From: Octopus sinensis
Taxonomy: Eukaryota
Length of the DNA stretch: 11,685 nucleotides
Direction: 5' to 3'
Assembly: GCF_006345805.1 (NCBI RefSeq)
Contig: NW_021826912.1
Location: 1-11,685 of the forward strand
This document shows, piece after piece, positions 125 through 11,685 of this stretch; within the stretch, counting starts at the first letter, position 1, and every line of letters starts with the position of its first letter. Made by a program: the position numbers and the translations under genes. The notes beneath the pieces are model-generated. The model was not told where the DNA came from. It made no database searches and worked only from the letters and a program-made list of their open reading frames with translations.

Positions 125-366
125 TCGGTGACCTACTATTAAAAATAATAAAGAAAACAAAGTCGAAAAGTCTATTTATTTCACATAATTTCGAAACCTC
201 AAGTGCGTGACGGAGTCTGAAGATATAAATTTTAGACTTTGAGATTTCAACACTCTTATTTTTAAAGAAGTTCGTAAAAGAAAATCAATTCGTAATAATG
301 AAAGTAAAGGATAAAATGAGAAACGACTTACGTGTTATAAATTGATTTTTCGCTCATTATTCATAA

Positions 367-596
367 GGCGGTGTGCTGGCAGAATTGCTAGCACGCCGGG
401 CGAAATGCGTAGCCGTATTTCGTCTACCGTTACGTTCTGAGTTCAAATTCCGCCGAGGTCGACTTTGCCATTCATCCTTTCGGGGTCGATAAATTAGTAC
501 CAGTTATGCACTGGGGTCGATGTAATCGACTTAATCCGTTTGTCTGTCCTTGTTTGTCCCCTCTGTGTTTAGCCCCTTGTGGGTAGTAAAGAAATA
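367..596 (+). mobile_element. tRNA-type SINE, family 1, full-length copy
   Basis: Head GGCGGTGTGCTGGCAGAATTG with A-box-like TGGCAGAATTG (377-387) and B-box-like GAGTTCAAATTCC (439-451). Body CCTTTCGGGGTCGATAAATT.AGTACCAG; tail ends GTAAAGAAATA. Four further homologous copies occur in the window. Confidence 0.9.
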
Positions 597-780
597 GGTA
601 TTTCGTCTGCCGCTACGTTCTGAGTTCAAATTTCGCCGAGGTCGACTTTGCCTTTCATCCTTTCGGGGTCGATAAATTAAGTACCAGTTATGCACTGGGG
701 TCGATGTAATCGACTTAATCTCTTTGTCTGTCCTTGTTTGTCCCCTCTGTGTTTAGCCCCTTGTGGGTAGTAAAGAAATA
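597..780 (+). mobile_element. SINE family 1, headless tandem copy
   Basis: 184-bp near-identical repeat of 414-596, starting GGTATTTCGTC directly after the first tail. Possible short TSD for the whole unit: TATTCA at 358-363 and 781-786. Confidence 0.9.
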
Positions 781-1076: not shown

Positions 1077-1507
1077 TTTTCTTTATTAAACCAAAATGGT
1101 TTACATAGAGGGGACATCACAGGACAGACAAGGACATTTAGGGGACAAACACACATTCCTAAAAATTTAATGAGGAAACGGATGTATTTACACTAAAATG
1201 AACGGATGGAGTTTTAAAATTATATATGATGGGTGGGTTTCCGGGTTAATGGGTTAACCCGCCGACTGATTATCCCTTTTATTAGACGTTTCCTTCCTTT
1301 TATGCTTGGATTGGCCGTGCAAGCACGGCTCCTTGCATTCTCATCTTTCTTACGACTTCCGACCATTTTTTATCAAATACTCTTTGCGGCAGGTTCTTCC
1401 TCTCCAGGCGGATCTTGCTGGCAAGATGGGTGGCGAAGAGGTTCACCAGCCTTCGTCCGGAGATGAATTGGCCTGTCACAACCCCTTTCATTCTCGTCTT
1501 CCATACC
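1077..1507 (-). mobile_element. 3' end of an L1/Tx1-type non-LTR retrotransposon (ORF2 C-terminus plus 3' UTR)
   Basis: Minus strand reads VWKTRMKGVVTGQFISGRRLVNLFATHLASKIRLERKNLPQRVFDKKWSEV, resembling the L1/Tx1 ORF2 C-terminal W-K-x-R and F-x-x-x-W motifs. It is followed by a 3' UTR ending AATAAAGAAAA at 1077. Clade assignment comes from motif recognition only. Confidence 0.7.
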
Positions 1508-1723
1508 TATTTCTTTACTACCCACAAGGGGCTAAACACAGAGGGGACAAACAAAGACAGACAAACGGATTAAGTCGATTACATCGACCCAGTGCGTAAC
1601 TGGTACTTAATTTATCGACCCTGAAAGAATGAAAGGCAAAGTCGACCTCGGCGGAATTTGAACTCACAAGGCAGCGGCGGACGAAATACCCCTAAGCAGT
1701 TCTCCCGGCGTGCTAACGTTTCT
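1508..1723 (-). mobile_element. SINE family 1 copy A (lacks about 15 nt of head)
   Basis: Reverse complement of 367-596; tail TATTTCTTTACTACCC begins at 1508. Confidence 0.9.
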
Positions 1724-1954
1724 TATTTCCTTATTGCCCACAAGGGGCTAAACACAGAAGGGACAAACAAGGACAGACAAACGGATTAAGTCGATTACAT
1801 CGATTCCAGTGCATAACTGGTACTTAATTTATCGACCCCGAAAGGATAAAAGGAAAAGTCACCCTCGGCGGAATTTGAACTCAGAACGCAGCGGCGGACG
1901 AAATATCTCTAAGCAGTTCGCCCGACGTGCTAACGTTTCTGCCAGCTCGCCGCC
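1724..1954 (-). mobile_element. SINE family 1 copy B, full length
   Basis: Minus-strand head GGCGGCGAGCTGGCAGAAACG, B-box GAGTTCAAATTCC and complete tail. Confidence 0.9.
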
Positions 1955-1971
1955 TTATCGTCTTTCATACC

Positions 1972-2134
1972 TATTTCTTTATTACCCACAAGGGGCTAAA
2001 CACAGAGGGGACAAACAAGGACAGACATAGGTATTAAGTCGATTACATCGACCCCAGTGCGTAACTGGTACTTAATTTATCGACCCCGAAAGGATGAAAG
2101 GCAAAGTCGACCTCGGCGGTATTTGAACTCAGAA
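1972..2134 (-). mobile_element. SINE family 1 copy C, 5'-truncated, with 15-bp TSD
   Basis: Flanked by identical ATCGTCTTTCATACC at 1957-1971 and 2135-2149. Confidence 0.92.
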
Positions 2135-2206
2135 ATCGTCTTTCATACCGTTTCTTTCTATATGGTTACTATGCAGAGAAATACCACCTTCTTTGGTGAA
2201 AGTGGG
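2135..2206 (-). pseudogene. Upstream continuation of the L1/Tx1-type ORF2 fragment (degenerate)
   Basis: Minus strand reads PTFTKEG / frameshift / VVFLCIVTI*KETV*KT. This joins in frame to VWKTRMKG at 1507 once the SINE cluster and duplicated targets are removed. Confidence 0.6.
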
Positions 2207-2587: not shown

Positions 2588-3239
2588 GGATCTTTTCGGT
2601 TTGAACGGCAGTTTTTTTTTAATAATTTCCACGTAACTAAACACTTTTAAACTTCGTATACTGGTATACTCCTTTAATTGATTAATGAAAACATCACACC
2701 ATTGTAAAGAAACCGTTTTCGTCAGATGAATTCATGAACTTCAAAATAAAGGACATTCTAAATGATTTAACACTTAAAATCCACGGAGCAAAAACATTTA
2801 CAATGATTAAGTTACTATTTCACTCAGCTGGGATCTTTTCGGTTTGAACGGCAGTTTTTAACATAATTTCCAGGTAACTAAACACTTTTAAACTTCGTAT
2901 ACTGGTAGAATGTGTTTATAAAACATCTTTTTCTCTTGGCTTTTTTGAAAAAAATTCTCTAGTTTGTGAGATATTTGTTGGGTTTTTTTTCTTCAATTTC
3001 TGCAATTTCAACCAATCAATGACGTCTATTGAGGTGAAAACATTCTGTGCCGTATGAAAATGTCCCTCGTTTAAGAAACAGATTGGGTTTATTTACATTT
3101 CTGAAGAAAAAAAAGCTACCCTTCCCCCTAACCCTAAAAGAGATTGAAATGCAATAGATCGATACAAGGGTCATAATTATGGGTGACAGTTTCATATGAC
3201 ACCACTAGAAAAAAACTGCCGTTCAAACCGAAAAGATCC
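2588..3239 (-). mobile_element. Composite GGATC-TIR MITE with 8-bp TSD (Merlin-like or hAT)
   Basis: TIR GGATCTTTTCGGTTTGAACGGCAGT at 2588, again at 2831, and inverted ending at 3239. Exact TSD CGTTTCAG at 2580-2587 and 3240-3247. 2831-3239 is a complete ~410-bp unit; 2588-2666 is an extra 79-bp terminus. Confidence 0.88.
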
Positions 3240-3469
3240 CGTTTCAGTAAGCGTGTGAACCTAGGAGGGGAATATGTTGAATAAAATCATATTTAACTGA
3301 TCCTCCTCTATTTTCTTTTACCAAAAGCCAGGAACTTTTCAGCCCCACCTCATATATTGGTTAGCATGTATTTATATGGAAATAAGATATTAAAATCACA
3401 GGTTTAATGGTGTACTTTTTATTAGGTATCGACAGGAACTTTCTGATACCACCTCGTGTGTATTATATA

Positions 3470-4036
3470 CACTACCGTCAGAAATTAATTAGCACCCTTG
3501 ATTTGCTCACCATGAAGCATGGTGGGGGTGGTCTGATGGTGTGAGGGGCGTTCAGCTACAGTGGTGTTGGGCGGCTCTATGCCGTCGAAGGCAACATCAA
3601 TGCAGCAAAGTACGTTGAGATAGTACGGGATACCTCTTTGGTGGCGAGGAGTACGTGCTGGCCAGTCACCTGACCTGAACCCTATTGAGAACCTCTGGAG
3701 TCGATTGGGTAGGGATTTGAATGTGCAGCAATACAGGAACCGACACGAGCTGTTTGGGGCACTTCTTGCTGCATGAGGGGCCATCCCTGCACAGTACCTG
3801 CAGGCACTCATAGACAGCATGCCGACCTGCGTAGCAGCTGTCATTGCTGCCAAAGGAGGAGCAACAAAATATTGACTAAATTTCACGATTAATAACAATT
3901 ATGTGGTGTGCTGGGATATGTTTTAATAAATTTTTGATTAAAAACGAGTTCGTTTCTGATAATAAGTTAATTAAATTAAGAAAATGTAAGAAAATGTAGA
4001 AATTTGAGAAGTGCTACTTAATTTCCGAAGCAAGTG
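3470..4036 (+). mobile_element. Internally deleted Tc1-family DNA transposon
   Basis: TA flanks at 3468-3469 and 4037-4038. 26-bp TIRs CACTACCGTCAGAAATTAATTAGCAC and CACTTGCTTCGGAAATTAAGTAGCAC (21/26 match). Transposase remnants inside. Confidence 0.93.
3509..3875 (+). pseudogene. Tc1 transposase C-terminal remnant
   Basis: TMKHGGGGLMV*GAFSYSGVGRLYAVEGNINAAKYVEIVRD ... QSPDLNPIENLW ... SMPTCVAAVIAAKGGATKY*. These are canonical Tc1 motifs. Two in-frame stops; regions carrying the first and second catalytic Asp are missing. Confidence 0.92.
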
Positions 4037-4091
4037 TATATAGGTGTGTATTATATATATAGGAGTACCACCTAGTGTGTATTATATATAC

Positions 4092-4476
4092 AGGAGTGGC
4101 TGTGTGGTAAGTAGCTTGCTAACCAACACATGGTTCCGGGTTCAGTCCCACTGCGTGGCATCTTGGGCAAGTGTCTTCTGCGATAGCCCCGGGCCGACCA
4201 ATGCCTTGTGAGTGGATTTGGTAGACGGAAACTGAAAGAAGCCTGTCGTATATATGTATATATATATGTGTGTCTGTGTTTGTCCCCATAGCATTGCTTG
4301 ACAACCGATGCTGGTGTGTTTACGTCCTCGTCACTTGGCGGTTCGGTAAAAGAGACCGATATTATAAGTACTGGGCTTACAAAAGAATAAGTCCCGGGGT
4401 CGATTTGCTCGACTAAAGGCGGTGCTCCAGCATGGCCGCAGTCAAATGACTGAAACAAGTAAAAGAGTAAAGAGTA
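4092..4476 (+). mobile_element. tRNA-derived CORE-like SINE, family 2, full length
   Basis: A-box TGGCTGTGTGG (4097-4107), B-box GGTTCAGTCCC (4139-4149), CORE-like TCTTGGGCAAGTGTCTT, internal TA/TG microsatellite, 3' hairpin CAGTCAAATGACTG and tail GTAAAAGAGTAAAGAG. Confidence 0.88.
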
Positions 4477-4485
4477 TATATATAT

Positions 4486-5480
4486 GGATCATTTCGGTTT
4501 GAACGGCAGTTTTTTCTAGCGGTGTCATATGAAATTGTCACCCATAATTATGACCCTAGAATCGATCTATTGCATTTCAATCTGTTTTAGGGTTAGGGGT
4601 GGGGGGAAGGCTCCTTTTTTTTTTCAGAAATGTAAATAAACCCAATCTATTTCTTAAACGAGGGACATATTCATACGGCACAGAATGTTTTTTTTTACCT
4701 CAATAGATGTCAGTGATTGGTTGAAATTGCAGAAATTGAAGAAAAAGCAACAACAAATATCTTACAAACTATAGAATTTTCTCAATAAAGCCAAGAGAAA
4801 AAGATGTTTTATAAACACATTCTACCAGTATACGAAGTTTAAAATTTTTTAGTTACCTAGAAATTATGTTAAACACTGCCGTTCAAACCGAAAAGATCTC
4901 AAATATCTTACAAACTATAGAATTTTCTCAATAAGCCAAGAGAAAAAGATGTTTTATAAACACATTCTATCAGTATACGAAGTTTAAAATTTTTTAGTTA
5001 CCTAGAAATTATGTTAAACACTGCCGTTCAAACCGAAAAGATCTCAAATATCTTACAAACTATAGAATTTTCTCAATAAAGCCAAGAGAAAAAGATGTTT
5101 TATAAACACATTCTATCAGTATACGAAGTTTAAAATTTTTTAGTTACCTAGAAATTATGTTAAACACTGCCGTTCAAACCGAAAAGATCTCAAATATCTT
5201 ACAAACTATAGAATTTTCTCAATAAAGCCAAGAGAAAAAGATGTTTTATAAACACATTCTATCAGTATACGAAGTTTAAAATTTTTTAGTTACCTAGAAA
5301 TTATGTTAAACACTGCGTTCAAACCGAAAAGATCTCAAATATCTTACAACTATAGAATTTTCTCAATAAAGCCAAGAGAAAAAGATGTTTTATAAACACA
5401 TTCTACCAGTATACGAAGTTTAAAATTTTTTAGTTACCTAGAAATTATGTTAAACACTGCCGTTCAAACCGAAAAGATCC
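4486..5480 (+). mobile_element. GGATC-TIR MITE with five tandem copies of its right end
   Basis: Left TIR GGATCATTTCGG at 4486; final right TIR ends GATCC at 5480. Flanks ATATATAT and ATTTATAT (7/8) are compatible with an 8-bp TSD in an AT tract. Confidence 0.88.
4754..5480 (+). repeat. Tandem array, 5 x 145-146 bp, MITE right terminus
   Basis: Units start CAAATATCTTAC at 4754, 4900, 5045, 5191 and 5336. They differ only by single-base indels and one C/T site (CTACCAG vs CTATCAG). Confidence 0.95.
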
Positions 5481-5927
5481 ATTTATATATATATATATAT
5501 ATATTAATTTATAATAGAAGGGTAAAATTTATTAGTTAAATTAATTAATTACTCTTCTATTGTTAATTTTAATTTATAATTTACTCCATGATAGAATATT
5601 GTAGTTTTCTGCGATATTGCTCGTAGCATACACGTGGGTATGGAGTTTGAATAGTGTATTCACATTCGGCTCTGTAAATTTTGGAAGTGTTGGTTGGATA
5701 TCTGTTACTCTTTTACTTGTTTCAGTCATTTTACTGTGGCCATGCTGGAGCACCGCCTTTAGTCGAGCAAATCGACCCCTGAACGTATTCTTTGGAAGGA
5801 AGCCTAGTACTTATTCTATCGGTCTGTTTTGCCGAACCGCTAAGTTACGGGGACGTAAACACACCAGCATCGGTTGTCAAGCGATGTTGGGGGACAAACA
5901 CAGACACACAACCATACACACACGCAC

Positions 5928-7189: not shown

Positions 7190-8106
7190 CGATCTTTTCG
7201 GTTTGACCGGCAGTTTTTTTCTAGCGGTGTCATATGAAATTGTCACCCATAATTGTGATCCTAGTATCGATCTATTGCATTTCAATCTGTTTTAGGGTTA
7301 GGGTTAGAAGTGGGGGGAAGGGTATCTTTTTTTCTTCACAAATCTAAATAAACCCAATCTGTTTCTTAAACGAGGGACATATTCATACGGCACAGAATGC
7401 TTTCACCTCAATAGACGTCACTGATTGGTTGAAATTGCAGAAATTGAAAAAAAAAAACAACAAATATGTTACAAACTATAGAATTTTCTCAATAAAGCCA
7501 AGAGAAAAAGATGTTTTATAAACACATTCTACCAGTATACGAAGTTTAAAAGTGTTTAGTTACGTAGAAATTATTTTAAAAAACAGCACTTCAAACCGAA
7601 AAGATCCGTTTCTTAAACGAGGTACATATTCATATGGCACAGAATGTTTTCACCTCAATATACGTCATTGATTGGTTGAAATTACAGAAATTGAAGAAAA
7701 AACAACAACAAATATCTTACAAACTATAGAATTTTCACAATAAAGCCAAGAGAAAAAGATGTTTTATAAACACATTCTACCAGTATACGAAGTTTAAAAG
7801 TGTTTGGTTACGTGGAAATTATTTTTAAAAACTGCCTTTCAAACCGAAAAGATCCGTTTCTTAAACGAGGGACATATTCATATGGCACAGAATGTTTTCA
7901 CCTCAATAGACGTCATTGATTGGTTGAAATTGCAGAAATTGAAGAAAAAACAACAACATATATCTTACAAACTATAGAATTTTCTCAAAAAAGCCAAGAG
8001 AAAAAGATGTTTTATAAACACATTCTACCAGTATACGAAATTTAAAAGTGTTTAGTTACGTGGAAATTATTTTTAAGAAAAACTGCCGTTCTAACCGAAA
8101 TGATCC
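7190..8106 (+). mobile_element. GGATC-TIR MITE with three tandem copies of its right ~248 bp
   Basis: Left TIR (C)GATCTTTTCGGTTTGACCGGCAG at 7190. Right TIRs end at 7607, 7855 and 8106; units start GTTTCTTAAACGAG at 7361, 7608 and 7856. No clear TSD (5/8). Confidence 0.88.
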
Positions 8107-8653: not shown

Positions 8654-8716
8654 CCTATATGTGTGTGTGTTCATGTGTGTATATATATAGATCCTATATA
8701 TATGTGTGTGTGTGTG
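8551..8716. repeat. Compound (TA)n/(TG)n microsatellite with higher-order repeats
   Basis: Alternating TA and TG runs punctuated by ATCCTAT three times and GTGTTCATGTG twice. Confidence 0.9.
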
Positions 8717-8912
8717 TCTTTGCCCACCCACCATCGCTTGACAACCGATGTTCGTGTGCTTACGACTCCGTAACTTAGCGGTTCGGCAAAAGAGGCCCAT
8801 AGAATATGTACTAGGCTTACAAAGAATAATTTCTTCGATTTTTTTTCCGATTAAAAGTACTCCAGTAAGGTACTCCAGTATAGCCGCAGTCGAATGACTG
8901 CAACAAAAGAAT
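8703..8912 (+). mobile_element. SINE family 2, 3' half, diverged
   Basis: GCTTGACAACCGATG...TAACTTAGCGGTTCGGCAAAAGAG...GCCGCAGTCGAATGACTG is homologous to 4270-4470. Confidence 0.85.
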
Positions 8913-8913
8913 T

Positions 8914-9047
8914 ATATACATATATGACGGGTTTCTTTCAGTTTCCCCTCTACCAAATACACTCACAAGGATTTGGTCAGCCCAAGACTATAGTAGAAGA
9001 CACTTGCCCAAGGTACCATGCAGTGGAACTGAACCCGGGACCACGTG
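8914..9047 (-). mobile_element. SINE family 2, 5' half (B-box and CORE-like part)
   Basis: Minus strand GGGTTCAGTTCCACTGCATGGTACCTTGGGCAAGTGTCTTC...GAAACTGAAAGAAACCCGTCATATA is homologous to 4130-4255. The A box is not present. Confidence 0.85.
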
Positions 9048-9220
9048 ACGGGGAACGAATGACAAAAACACACACACAAAAAAAGGTAGAATAAAACAAG
9101 CAGATAAAACTACCAGATAATAACTTCACATAATTTATTAACCAACTACATATGAACATCAAGGTCTTTCTTATTTTGTATATATATATATAATATATAT
9201 ATTATATATATATATATATA

Positions 9221-9615
9221 CTAGCAGTATCGCCCGGCGTTGCTCGGGTTTGTAAGGGAAATAACTATATAAAAGCATTTTAGAGATGTAAAGTATAATA
9301 GCCATCTCAATATGGCTAACCACAAAGGGGGGGGTGTTACTGTAGCTTTTTACGTTCTGAGATTTAATAATACATTTTTAGAGAGTTACTTCCCTTATAT
9401 AATAGCAAAAAAATGCATTAAAAAATGGGAAAAAATTATGGTAAATTTTTTTTTAATCGTAGACTCATCGTAGACACGCGCTAATACCCAGAAGGGCTCG
9501 ATATGAATCACGACTATAAGATACCCGCTTTTGGTTAAACTGCACCGCAAAATGTGGGAGTAAGGAATCTAAATCGTAGGAGACAGACACACAACTTCAC
9601 TTTTATATATAAAGA
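9221..9615 (-). mobile_element. Non-autonomous Helitron, complete (395 bp)
   Basis: Minus strand A|TC 5' end (9616|9615), subterminal hairpin CCCGAGCAACGCCGGG, CTAG|T 3' end (9221|9220); no TSD. Confidence 0.9.
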
Positions 9616-9945
9616 TATATATATACACACACACACACACAAACACGTCTACTATTGCTGCAACATTTTATAATCATTAATCAATGTAATATCACACACC
9701 CCACTTCTGTTCAGCCACCCCACATAACTTTTTTAATATTTACTGCGATGTAAAATTAACGAAGCGAATGCAATTTATCTCCCCTTTGATCACTGATGTC
9801 GTCTGACAAACGCCAAGTAAAATGGCGTGAATCTGCCAAGCTAACTCGAACTTCAAGAGCCAAACGAATGGCAGATTTTCAATCCGGAAACCATTCTCAT
9901 TCCAAAAACGTATTATACATTTATGTAGAGCCAATGTAGACTAAA

Positions 9946-10204
9946 GACTATAAGATACCCGGTTTTGGTTAAACTGCACCGCAAAATGTGGGAGTAGTTA
10001 GGAATCTAAATCGTAGGAGACAGACACACAAGCTTACTTTTATATATTTACTAGTAGTATCGCCCGGCGTTGCTCGGGTTTGTAAGGGAAATAACTATAT
10101 AAGCATTTTTAGAGAGTTATAGACAAAAAATAGCAAAAAAAAAATGCATTAAAAATGGAAAAAAAATTATGGTAAATTTTTTTTAAATCGTTGACTCATC
10201 GTAG
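9946..10204 (-). mobile_element. Permuted Helitron: 3' part (10051-10204) joined to 5' part (9946-10050)
   Basis: On the minus strand, the hairpin plus CTAG end at 10051 is followed directly by TAAATATATAAAAG and the 5' region of the same family. Confidence 0.85.
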
Positions 10205-10309: not shown

Positions 10310-10699
10310 TCTTTATATATAAAACTGTAGTTGTGTGTCTGTCTCCTACGATTTAGATTCCTAACTACTCCCACATTTTGCGGTGCAGTTTAACCAAAAC
10401 CGGGTATCTTATAGTCGTGATTCATATCGAGCCCTTCTGGGTATTAGCGCGCGTCTACGATGAGTCTACGATTAAAAAAAAAAATTACCATCATTTTTTC
10501 CATTTTAATGCATTTTTCGCTATTGTATAAGGGAAGTAACTCTCTAAAAATGTCTACGATGAGTCAACGATTAAAAAAAAAATTACCATTTTTTATTCCA
10601 TTTTTAATGCATTTTTTGCTATTTTTTTGCTATAACTCTAGAAATGCTTATATAGTTATTTCCCTTACAAACCCGAGCAACGCCGGGCGATACTGCTAG
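10310..10699 (+). mobile_element. Non-autonomous Helitron, complete (390 bp)
   Basis: A|TC start (10309|10310), hairpin CCCGAGCAACGCCGGG at 10672-10687, CTAG|T end (10699|10700). Internal direct repeat with period 99 bp (10453, 10552). Confidence 0.92.
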
Positions 10700-10968
10700 T
10701 AAAGATATATATCAACAAAATGGAACTTGGAAATTTGAATAAATATTTGGATGTCTGTCAGTATACACGTGTGCGCGACCTCCATTCTTTTCACATTAAA
10801 TTCCAATATATTCGCAATGTGCGCTATCTGAGAGATATTTGTGGAATATTTCCCTAAAAGATATCCATTTTTTCTGAAAGTTATGAGCAAACAGTTGAGT
10901 AGAGGGCACACCTGTGGGGGTCCGCTCAAAATATCCCCACAAACGCCAAAAACAAGGTGAAGATGACT

Positions 10969-11120: not shown

Positions 11121-11235
11121 AAAGAGACGGAACGTTATTTGAAACAAAAGTCTTGGAGAAAACCTTTCCGATATTGTGACATCAGCGATCGCTGGACTTG
11201 AGAAATTCTTGCATGAATTCGTACAAAGAAGCTTC

Positions 11236-11252
11236 ACTCACACGCACACAAT

Positions 11253-11298
<46 letters not shown>

Positions 11299-11685
11299 AC
11301 ACACACACACCACACCCTCGAACACACACACACGCACGCAAACACTCACACACACACACACACACGCTCACACACACGCTCACACACATACTCGCACACG
11401 CTCACGCACACCTCGCCACATACAGACATACGCACGCTCACGCCCACACACGCTCACGCACACCACCCGCTCACGCACACACACGCTCACGCACACACAC
11501 GCTCACCACCACACGCTCACACACACACACGCTCACACACGCTCACACACACACACACGCTCACACACACACACGCTCACCACACACACGCACACACGCT
11601 CACACACACACTCACACACACACACGCACACACGCTCACACGCACACACGCTCACACACACACACGCTCACACACACACACACAC
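11236..11685. repeat. Long degenerate (CA)n microsatellite with recurrent CGCT interruptions
   Basis: CA runs; the distal half is dominated by CACACGCT-type units. It continues to the window end. Confidence 0.95.

What the first reader, a model, noticed from the sequence alone, without database searches (positions are those of the whole stretch)
1077..1130. SINE family 1 shares its 3' tail with an L1/Tx1-type LINE (candidate SINE-LINE partnership)
Seen: the LINE end TTTCTTTATTA...AGAGGGGACA....AGGACAGACA is colinear with the SINE tail at 1972-2027, with three exact blocks of 11, 10 and 10 nt at matching spacing, about 40/54 identity by hand alignment. Established: SINEs borrow the 3' tail of the LINE that mobilises them, typically CR1/L2/RTE; mammalian L1 needs only poly(A). 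Inference: this is a stringent-type L1/Tx1 partner recognising a structured tail. The LINE 3' region also has hairpins at 1242-1261 and 1314-1329.
Basis: partly seen in the sequence, partly recalled or inferred. Interest (0 to 1): 0.75.

Follow-up and report, generated by a model that had tools for sequence, protein, structure and literature searches.

The report
SINE and L1-like LINE share tail
A short repeat (SINE) in this octopus-like DNA ends with the same ~60-base tail as a broken L1-like LINE next to it, the classic sign that the LINE's enzyme copies the SINE; the relationship is a known kind but rare for L1-type LINEs in animals.

Summary
Window 1078-1141 matches the last ~60 nt of all five SINE-1 copies (71-75% identity, anchored at the SINE end, far above chance).

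It is not a stray SINE piece. It is the 3' end of a degraded minus-strand LINE copy: tail 1077-1141, rest of the 3' UTR 1142-1299, stop 1300-1302, ORF2 C-terminus 1303-1507. The ORF continues at 2150-~2193, beyond a cluster of three SINEs inserted into it.

The 67-aa ORF has relatives in Octopus bimaculoides and in Logan contigs. In those contigs it follows an RT remnant and a CCHC knuckle. It is followed, 112-301 nt after the stop, by the same tail motif.

A profile built only from SINE tails finds the LINE 3' ends, always on the ORF strand. The tail is the only conserved part of the 3' UTR.

The RT matches human L1 ORF2p far better than R2, and there are weak zf-RVT hits. This supports an L1-superfamily, probably Tx1-like, assignment, but no phylogeny was possible.

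A structured tail is not supported. Mobilisation is inferred, not shown.

Verdict: a genuine candidate SINE-LINE partnership, and a new member of a known kind.

The parts
1077..1141 (-). 3' terminal tail of the LINE copy. In element orientation it reads ...TGTCCTTGTCTGTCCTGTGATGTCCCCTCTATGTAAACCATTTTGGTTTAATAAAGAAAA. It is homologous to the SINE-1 tail.
   Evidence: similarity to 5 SINE tails; profile built from SINE tails only hits 1131-1078 on the minus strand, E 1e-4; alignment with 8 other LINE tails
1142..1299 (-). Rest of the LINE 3' UTR (223 nt in all). Contains the 8-bp hairpin 1242-1261 and the 10-nt palindrome GGGTTAACCC at 1251-1260.
   Evidence: with the tail excluded, modest colinear similarity to the UTRs of L009 (z 3.4), L001 (z 4.3) and L002 (z 3.3).: no similarity to the SINE body.
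1300..1507 (-). C-terminal coding end of LINE ORF2 (VWKTRMKGVVTGQFISGRRLVNLFATHLASKIRLERKNLPQRVFDKKWSEVVRKMRMQGAVLARPIQA, stop at 1300-1302).
   Evidence: phmmer: 10 true relatives, best E 8.8e-11; family alignment; Octopus bimaculoides A0A0L8HND8; 60-65% DNA identity to 14 loci in this segment only
1508..1723 (-). SINE-1 copy a, lacking about 17 nt of its 5' end, abutting copy b head-to-tail.
1724..1956 (-). SINE-1 copy b, full length.
1957..1971 (.). Target-site duplication copy ATCGTCTTTCATACC. This is LINE ORF2 sequence. An older, 13/15-identical copy lies at 1493-1507.
1972..2134 (-). SINE-1 copy c, 5'-truncated.
2135..2149 (.). Second identical copy of the 15-nt target-site duplication.
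2150..2193 (-). Continuation of LINE ORF2 upstream of the SINE cluster (...KKVVFLCIVTI*KET|VWKTRMKG...). A weak DNA match to L009 suggests it may reach about 2271.
   Evidence: removing 1508-2149 restores one frame across the junction; tblastn of relatives hits 2193-2137; protein alignments across the junction; DNA hits to L007, L008, L013
365..597 (+). SINE-1 full-length copy, tail at about 537-597.
598..780 (+). SINE-1 5'-truncated copy, head-to-tail with the previous one, tail at about 717-780.

Best explanation
Window 1077-1507 plus 2150-~2193 (minus strand) is a 5'-truncated, decayed copy of a non-LTR retrotransposon (LINE). It belongs to a cephalopod clade that is L1-superfamily, probably Tx1-like. 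Its last ~55-65 nt (1077-1141) form a tail conserved across the clade: TGTCTGTCC..TTGTYTGTCCCCTCTRTGT..~20 nt..AATAAAGAAA(TA), with no poly(A) and no microsatellite. SINE family 1 ends with the same tail, joined to an unrelated body. Shown: the homology of the tails, their end-anchoring, their LINE context, and their conservation relative to the rest of the UTR. Inferred: ORF2p of a LINE of this clade recognises this terminal sequence on SINE RNA in trans, nicks the target and reverse-transcribes from a fixed position. This would give copies with precise ...GAAATA ends, frequent 5' truncation and ~15-bp target-site duplications (TSDs). The particular LINE copy in the window is dead. It contains stop codons and has three SINEs inserted in its ORF2, so it is a relative of the partner, not the active partner itself.
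For: (1) Tail similarity to all 5 SINE copies is far above chance.
(2) The adjacent 67-aa ORF is a genuine conserved protein domain: 10 relatives by phmmer, best E 8.8e-11, and a profile search gives E down to 2e-31, including O. bimaculoides A0A0L8HND8.
(3) In contig L002 the same domain lies downstream of an RT remnant on the same strand. The stitched remnant gives RVT_1 E 8e-5 and human L1 ORF2p E 3e-12. In L007 and L010 the domain follows a CCHC knuckle with weak zf-RVT hits.
(4) A profile built only from the 5 SINE tails hits L004 (E 4e-7), L013 (5e-5), the window LINE (1e-4), L009 (7e-4), L008 (2e-3), L012 (0.016) and L001 (0.2). These seven hits all lie on the ORF strand, in the 3' UTR after the ORF2 stop, and use only tail positions of the model. 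The UTRs measured in 7 copies are 112-301 nt long. The L004 tail is 86-89% identical to the SINE tails over 36 nt.
(5) No LINE UTR resembles the SINE body, so the hits are LINE tails and not SINE insertions.
(6) Among 7 independent LINE copies, the last 55 nt are conserved (0.57 against 0.48 for shuffles) while the other UTR windows are at shuffle level (cruder measure).
(7) All five SINE copies end at ...GAAATA without an A-run, two or three are 5'-truncated, and one has a perfect 15-bp TSD.
(8) The size and identity of the shared region fall within what the field accepts for SINE-LINE pairs: 35-61 bp and 72-95% in bivalves (PMC11481361).
Against: Only one LINE copy is in the window, and the relatives come from another species or from very diverged families: 41-56% amino-acid identity and no high-identity shared repeats. 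No consensus of the true partner family could be built. The window LINE tail is only 71-75% identical to the SINE tail. The RT evidence rests on one frameshifted contig, and the Pfam hits (RVT_1, zf-RVT) are below gathering thresholds. No endonuclease or ORF1 was seen. No TSD was found for the LINE copy itself. The tRNA-like head of the SINE was not detected by ARAGORN or Rfam. No secondary structure is supported in the tail. Trans-mobilisation was not tested.
Confidence: 0.72

Rival explanations
1. 1077-1141 is an old, severely 5'-truncated copy of SINE-1 (or of a sister SINE) that happened to insert about 160 nt downstream of an unrelated LINE ORF. On this view the LINE has no such tail.
For: The window tail is somewhat closer to the SINE tail (0.745 over 55 nt) than to most other LINE tails (pairwise mean about 0.57-0.61). 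5'-truncated SINE copies do occur here. No TSD could be defined for either reading.
Against: Seven independent LINE contigs carry the same motif on the ORF strand in their 3' UTRs, never extending into SINE-body positions. The window UTR length (223 nt) is inside the range of 112-301 nt measured in 7 copies. UTR similarity to L009, L001 and L002 runs up to about 20 nt before the tail. No second tail lies further downstream.
Confidence: 0.08
2. The tail sharing is real, but the LINE belongs to another APE-type clade (for example CR1, RTE or L2) and not to L1/Tx1.
For: The PDB holds only L1 and R2-type LINE RTs, so 'best hit L1 ORF2p' cannot separate L1 from CR1, RTE or L2. The Pfam hits are sub-threshold. 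AlphaFold of the C-terminal domain was too poor to use (pLDDT 58). CR1 and RTE are abundant in octopus (PMC13282606).
Against: A C-terminal CX2CX7HX4C knuckle gives zf-RVT hits in two copies at the right profile positions. From my own knowledge of the families: the KSPxLDxLPYEFY motif before the RT and the post-knuckle domain are L1/Tx1-like, and CR1, RTE and L2 ORF2 lack a terminal CCHC and usually end in short tandem repeats, which these copies lack. L1-Tx1 is the only L1-superfamily lineage annotated in octopus, and it is recently active there.
Confidence: 0.15
3. The tail is shared because of recombination or template switching in the opposite direction or from a third element. Either LINEs of this clade picked the tail up from a SINE, or both took it from another LINE. 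On this view the present LINE clade does not mobilise SINE-1.
For: Direction cannot be read from similarity alone. Mosaic exchange of SINE and LINE modules is documented (PMC11481361, PMC4824008). A related motif, TGTCTGTGTTTGTCCCC, also sits inside SINE family 2.
Against: The tail is present in LINE copies whose ORFs are only 41-56% identical and that come from at least two species, so it is old in the LINE clade. It is the only conserved UTR segment, which argues for function in the LINE itself.
Confidence: 0.05

Closest known systems
Stringent-type SINE/LINE pairs, e.g. eel UnaSINE1/UnaL2 (Kajikawa and Okada 2002; cited in PMC4824008 and PMC3747384)
   Same: The SINE carries the terminal tens of nucleotides of a LINE 3' UTR, the rest of the SINE is unrelated, and copies end precisely without poly(A).
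   Different: UnaL2 is of the L2 clade. Its tail has a proven stem-loop and a 3' (TGTAA)n repeat. Here no repeat and no supported stem-loop were found, and the RT looks L1-like.
L1-clade stringent pairs: maize ZmSINE2/3 with LINE1-1_ZM, and Chlamydomonas SINEX-3_CR with L1-1_CR (Ohshima 2012, PMC3472496; review PMC3747384)
   Same: An L1-superfamily LINE whose last ~45-80 nt are conserved within the lineage and shared with a SINE. The argument from 'tail more conserved than the rest of the element' is the same one used here.
   Different: [quoted passage not shown] The present case is an animal (cephalopod), lacks poly(A), and shows no convincing covariation.
SINEU and Tx1-Mar in crocodilians (Kojima 2015, PMC4494074)
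   Same: A SINE is proposed to be mobilised by Tx1-clade LINEs. Tx1 elements have marked target preference, and here two SINE insertions used the identical 15-bp target.
   Different: The SINEU link rests on a shared target (a Mariner transposon), not on a shared tail, and its heads derive from snRNA.
Mammalian L1 with Alu/B1 (relaxed type)
   Same: The RT of the present LINE is most similar to L1 ORF2p, and the TSD of about 15 bp is in the L1 range.
   Different: L1 needs only poly(A) and shares no tail with Alu. Here there is no poly(A) and there is a shared specific tail.
L1-Tx1 LINE families annotated in Octopus vulgaris and other coleoids (PMC13282606, PMC8967140)
   Same: Same host group. 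L1-Tx1 is present and recently active: 13 families and 421 recent insertions.
   Different: Those papers do not pair SINEs with LINEs. 893 of the 900 recently active SINE families are 'unclassified', and neither 'partner' nor 'tail' occurs in the text.

Membership tests
SINE/LINE pair with a common 3' tail | The 3' end of the SINE is homologous to the 3' end of a LINE, anchored at the termini and confined to the tail. | tested here: met
SINE/LINE pair with a common 3' tail | The tail-bearing long element is a LINE, i.e. the tail lies in the 3' UTR downstream of an RT-encoding ORF2. | tested here: met
   The tail lies 112-301 nt after the stop of a conserved C-terminal domain in the 7 copies measured. 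In L002 that domain is preceded by an RT remnant and in L007 and L010 by a CCHC knuckle. The RT evidence comes from one decayed contig.
SINE/LINE pair with a common 3' tail | SINE and LINE coexist in one genome and were active at overlapping times. | tested here: inconclusive
   Both occur in this window (SINEs are even inserted into the LINE). Activity profiles need the genome. The other LINE copies come from another species.
SINE/LINE pair with a common 3' tail | Tail-dependent mobilisation in trans. | not testable with these tools
   Needs a retrotransposition assay.
L1 superfamily / Tx1 clade of non-LTR retrotransposons | The RT domain groups with L1/Tx1 in a phylogeny. | tested here: inconclusive
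   Best solved-structure match is human L1 ORF2p at E 3e-12, against 2e-3 for R2. No CR1, RTE or L2 references were available, so no tree was made.
L1 superfamily / Tx1 clade of non-LTR retrotransposons | C-terminal CCHC zinc knuckle (zf-RVT type) after the RT. | tested here: met
   CLRCADREIVLHAFVEC in L007 and CPKCELVSEIVMHVFAHW in L010. zf-RVT hits at E 0.005 and 0.03 at profile positions 33-79, below the gathering score.
L1 superfamily / Tx1 clade of non-LTR retrotransposons | N-terminal APE-type endonuclease, and an ORF1. | not tested
   No contig reaches that far upstream.
L1 superfamily / Tx1 clade of non-LTR retrotransposons | Target-site preference (typical of Tx1). | tested here: inconclusive
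   Two separate SINE insertion events used the identical 15-bp target in the LINE ORF (1493-1507, 1957-1971, 2135-2149). This is n = 2 events at one site only.
tRNA-derived SINE | [quoted passage not shown] | tested here: not met
   ARAGORN found no tRNA and Rfam gave no tRNA hit at E <= 1. Only a B-box-like GAGTTCAAATTCC is visible by eye. The origin of the head stays open.
tRNA-derived SINE | Short, non-coding, dispersed copies with TSDs and variable 5' truncation. | tested here: met
   Five copies of 163-233 nt, 85-99% alike, with a perfect 15-bp TSD for copy c.
Stringent-type LINE with a structured 3' tail | Conserved stem-loop in the tail, supported by stability or covariation. | tested here: not met
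   Tail z-scores range from -1.3 to +1.6. RNAalifold finds a 3-bp hairpin at -0.15 kcal/mol. A 4-6-bp mini-hairpin sits before AAUAAAGAAA in only 4 of 10 tails.

The most novel reading that the evidence does not exclude
A cephalopod L1/Tx1-clade LINE lineage uses stringent, sequence-specific recognition of a ~55-nt poly(A)-less tail, together with a defined nick site (the same 15-bp target was used twice). Through that tail it drove amplification of one of the abundant, so far 'unclassified' octopus SINE families. This would be the first animal SINE/LINE tail pair in the L1 superfamily.
Probability: 0.3. Interest if true: 0.7.

Novelty: new member of a known kind. Interest (0 to 1): 0.5.

Why it matters
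SINEs make up roughly a tenth of octopus genomes, and their expansion is octopus-specific. Yet the repeat papers I read name no partner LINE: most SINE families are left unclassified (PMC13282606, PMC8967140). A tail shared with an L1-like LINE gives a concrete, testable candidate driver for one SINE family.

It also bears on an older question. [quoted passage not shown] An animal L1/Tx1 lineage with a conserved, poly(A)-less tail would support the view that stringent 3'-end recognition is ancestral in the L1 superfamily and was relaxed in mammals.

The relationship itself (a SINE borrowing a LINE tail) is textbook, so the interest lies in the clade and the host, not in the mechanism.

Tried and rejected
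- Pfam on the 63-aa ORF and on all six frames of 781-1510 found nothing.
- The word-indexed protein search of the ORF, and of a SINE-derived ORF, found no candidate. This nearly led me to dismiss the 'ORF2 fragment'. Only the exhaustive phmmer search found its relatives.
- Exact look-up of 10 window ORFs in the protein collection: none present.
- P0003 (O. bimaculoides) has no contig on record.
- Collection scans for the tail or for a UTR hairpin (viral contigs once, metagenome contigs twice) found nothing.
- ARAGORN and Rfam on the window gave no tRNA and no meaningful family.
- AlphaFold2 of the C-terminal domain with 8 sequences gave pLDDT 58 and pTM 0.31, so no fold search was run.
- A PDB sequence search of the stitched post-RT region of L010 gave no hit.
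- The idea that 2150-2340 is a promoter plus first exon was rejected. The 2150-2193 part is LINE ORF2 once the SINE cluster is removed; beyond 2193 nothing is settled.
- The idea that the GAAAGAAAC next to the SINE target marks microhomology priming was rejected. It lies on the wrong side of the TSD for first-strand priming (reasoned from the sequence).
- A CDS control anchored at the stop codon was uninformative, because C-terminal lengths differ between copies.
- A search for the run accessions in papers found nothing, so the species of the Logan contigs is unknown.

Full report
**What the window is.** The 11.7-kb window is repeat-rich, AT-rich eukaryotic DNA. The only named relative found for anything in it is an Octopus bimaculoides protein, and the repeat content fits an octopod genome.

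SINE family 1 occurs five times:
- 365-597 (+, full length)
- 598-780 (+, 5'-truncated)
- 1508-1723 (-)
- 1724-1956 (-, full length)
- 1972-2134 (-, 5'-truncated)

The copies are 85-99% alike. In their own orientation all five end in ...GAAATA (four read ...TAAAGAAATA, copy b ...TAAGGAAATA), with no A-run or microsatellite.

**Checking the observation.** A gapped alignment of 1077-1130 with 1972-2027 has 45 matches. blastn shows that 1078-1141 matches all five SINE tails at 71-75% over 56-66 nt (alignment). None of 3000 random 100-mers came near the observed score. The similarity begins at the last bases of the SINE and ends after about 64 nt. The rest of 1142-1506 matches nothing else in the window.

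**Is there a LINE?** At first the answer looked like no. There was no Pfam domain in any frame of 781-1510, and no hit in the word-indexed protein search.

The exhaustive phmmer search changed this. The 67-aa reading frame 1303-1503 (-) has 10 genuine relatives. The best has E 8.8e-11 and 56% identity. They share the motif FFC.VAILKE.(I/V)WKTRMKG..TG.FISG..LVN.F..HLKSKI.LEKR.L....F.K.WK.VV at their C-termini. A profile of them retrieves O. bimaculoides A0A0L8HND8 and Logan contigs with E down to 2e-31.

I fetched 14 contigs, L001-L014. DNA similarity to the window is confined to the coding part (window 1507-1270, 60-65%).

In L002 the domain lies about 0.7-1.2 kb downstream of an RT remnant on the same strand. 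Stitched across frameshifts, the remnant gives RVT_1 at E 8e-5 (below the gathering score). It gives human LINE-1 ORF2p at E 3e-12 over 227 residues, including the KSPG.DG...EFY region, against 2e-3 for R2 proteins.

In L007 and L010 the domain follows a CX2CX7HX4C knuckle, with sub-threshold zf-RVT hits at the right profile positions (E 0.005 and 0.03). The reading frame at 1303-1507 is therefore the extreme C-terminus of a LINE ORF2.

**The LINE continues beyond the SINE cluster.** The sequence ATCGTCTTTCATACC occurs at 1957-1971 and again at 2135-2149. A 13/15-identical copy lies at 1493-1507. Removing 1508-2149 joins 2150... to ...1507 in a single frame...KKVVFLCIVTI*KETVWKTRMKGVV.... This reproduces the family motif FFCVVAILKETVWKTRMKG across the junction. 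Relatives also match 2193-2137 by tblastn and 2190-2150 by blastn.

So the three minus-strand SINEs sit inside the LINE's ORF2, and the 15-mer is a TSD made of LINE sequence. It is present three times, which means two insertion events used exactly the same target. The older event brought in the b+a dimer, and its TSD copies are 13/15 alike. The younger brought in copy c, and its TSD copies are identical.

**Is 1077-1141 the LINE's own end?** Four lines of evidence say yes.

- Downstream of their stop codons, the related contigs carry the same kind of end:
  - L004 ...CTGTGTTTGATCCCTTGTGGGAAATAAAGAAATAG (86-89% identical to the SINE tails over 36 nt)
  - L013 ...CCCCACCTGTGTTCGCCCTTGTGGGTAATAAAAAA
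  - L009 ...CCTTGTTCGTCCCGTCTATGTATAGGTGAAAAAATAAAATAAAA
  - L008, L012, L001 and L002 similarly
  - L005 and L007 break off inside TGTTTGTCTGTCC
- As an unbiased test, I built a profile from the five SINE tails alone and searched all the contigs plus the SINE-masked window. The hits were L004 (E 4e-7), L013 (5e-5), window 1131-1078 (1e-4), L009 (7e-4), L008 (2e-3), L012 (0.016) and L001 (0.2). These seven hits are all on the ORF strand, downstream of the ORF2 stop, and use only tail positions of the model. The 3' UTRs measured in 7 copies are 112-301 nt long.
- No LINE UTR resembles the SINE body just upstream of the tail. These hits are therefore not truncated SINE insertions.
- The window UTR is 223 nt, within the family range. 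With the tail excluded, it shows modest colinear similarity to the UTRs of L009, L001 and L002 (z 3.3-4.3).

Among seven independent LINE copies, the last 55 nt are conserved (mean identity 0.57 against 0.48 for shuffles). The first 55 nt of the UTR and the 55 nt before the tail are at shuffle level (a cruder measure). This is the same argument Ohshima used for stringent L1 lineages in monocots (PMC3472496). The rival reading, a stray old SINE tail, is therefore unlikely; I put it at about 8%.

**How it most likely works.**

Shown:
- A LINE clade with a conserved terminal sequence of ~55-65 nt.
- A SINE that carries that sequence at its very end.
- Precise 3' ends without poly(A) in both.
- 5'-truncated SINE copies.
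- A 15-bp TSD.

Inferred from established knowledge of stringent-type LINEs: ORF2p of an active member of the clade binds the tail on SINE RNA and starts target-primed reverse transcription at a fixed position.

The tail contains AATAAA within its last 12 nt. LINE (Pol II) and SINE (Pol III) transcripts should therefore extend beyond the element end. The uniform ...GAAATA termini then imply internal, sequence-guided initiation; this is inference. The LINE copy in the window is dead, so it is a relative of the partner and not the partner itself.

**Structure.** The claim of a structured tail does not hold up:
- Tail RNAs fold no better than dinucleotide shuffles (z -1.3 to +1.6).
- RNAalifold finds only a 3-bp hairpin worth -0.15 kcal/mol.
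- A mini-hairpin just before AAUAAAGAAA is visible in the SINE (GCCC/GGGU), L004, L013 and the window LINE (AAACC/GGUUU), with one double change. That is too little to count as support.
- The hairpin at 1314-1329 is stable (z -3.1) but lies in the last codons of ORF2.
- The hairpin at 1242-1261 is an 8-bp stem in a region that is otherwise not unusual.

**Clade.** The L1-superfamily assignment rests on three things: the RT match to L1 ORF2p, the zf-RVT-type knuckle, and motif-level resemblance that I know from L1/Tx1 elements. L1-Tx1 is the only L1-type lineage annotated in octopus, and it is recently active there (PMC13282606). No tree, endonuclease or ORF1 could be examined, and the AlphaFold model was too poor to use. 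I rate L1/Tx1 at about 0.6-0.7.

**Comparison and novelty.** SINE/LINE tail sharing is textbook. The size and identity of the shared segment are typical: 35-61 bp and 72-95% in bivalves (PMC11481361). L1-clade pairs are rare. A 2013 review counted 3 of 58 known pairs, all in plants or an alga (PMC3747384). A Tx1-SINE link in crocodilians rests on shared targets, not tails (PMC4494074). The octopus repeat papers I read do not assign partners to SINEs. Repbase could not be consulted. I file this as a new member of a known kind, of moderate interest.

Noticed in passing
window 1493-1507, 1957-1971, 2135-2149: The same 15-nt LINE sequence is present three times around the SINE cluster. Two independent SINE insertion events used exactly the same target and stagger (older TSD pair 13/15 alike, younger pair identical). 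This hints at a site-specific endonuclease, as is known for Tx1-type LINEs.
   Followed up: partly
window 365-780 and 1508-1956: Both SINE-1 groups contain head-to-tail dimers with no spacer: 365-597|598-780 and, on the minus strand, 1956-1724|1723-1508. In each the downstream unit is 5'-truncated. This is compatible with template jumping of the RT or with nested insertion at the 5' end of a resident copy.
   Followed up: no
window 1251-1260; L005 ~897-906, L007 ~847-856, L008 ~1091-1100: A perfect 10-nt palindrome sits 24-50 nt after the ORF2 stop in several LINE copies: GGGTTAACCC in the window, GGTTCGAACC in L005, L007 and L008, and GGCGGGTTAATTAAAACC in L009. This may be a second conserved UTR element.
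   Followed up: partly
window 190-295 and 783-888: The left and right flanks of the plus-strand SINE dimer are 69% identical over 106 nt. This looks like an old local duplication, unrelated to the TSD.
   Followed up: no
window ~3480-3880 (+): Frameshifted remnant of a Tc1/mariner-type transposase (SPDLNPIENLW motif). Pfam DDE_3 at E 2.6e-7, above the gathering score.
   Followed up: partly
window 4085-4480 (+); partial reverse copies ~5700-5900; further partial copies ~8697-8900 and ~8930-9060: A second, longer composite SINE-like family with an internal (TA/TG)n microsatellite. Its 3' half begins with TGTCTGTGTTTGTCCCC, the same motif as in the LINE/SINE-1 tail (nhmmer E 0.03-0.08), and it ends in GTAAAAGAGTA.
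   Followed up: no
window 2589-3240, 4487-5480, 7191-8106: MITE-like elements bounded by inverted GATCTTTTCGGTTTGAACGGCAGTT termini, with internal tandem arrays of 146-nt and 248-nt units.
   Followed up: no
window 9220-9600, 9939-10090, 10315-10700: Another repeat family in inverted arrangement (9446-9562 against 10366-10482, 98% complementary), with CTAGCAGTATCGCCCGGCGTTGCTCGGGTTTGTAAGGG ends.
   Followed up: no
window 11230-11685: A long (CA)n / (CACACGCT)n-type compound microsatellite runs to the end of the window (GC skew -0.37).
   Followed up: no
L009 860-919 (-): Directly after the LINE 3' end, the Logan contig carries, in the opposite orientation, a SINE whose body is 74% identical to SINE-1 positions 73-132. 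Related SINE bodies therefore exist in that other species.
   Followed up: no
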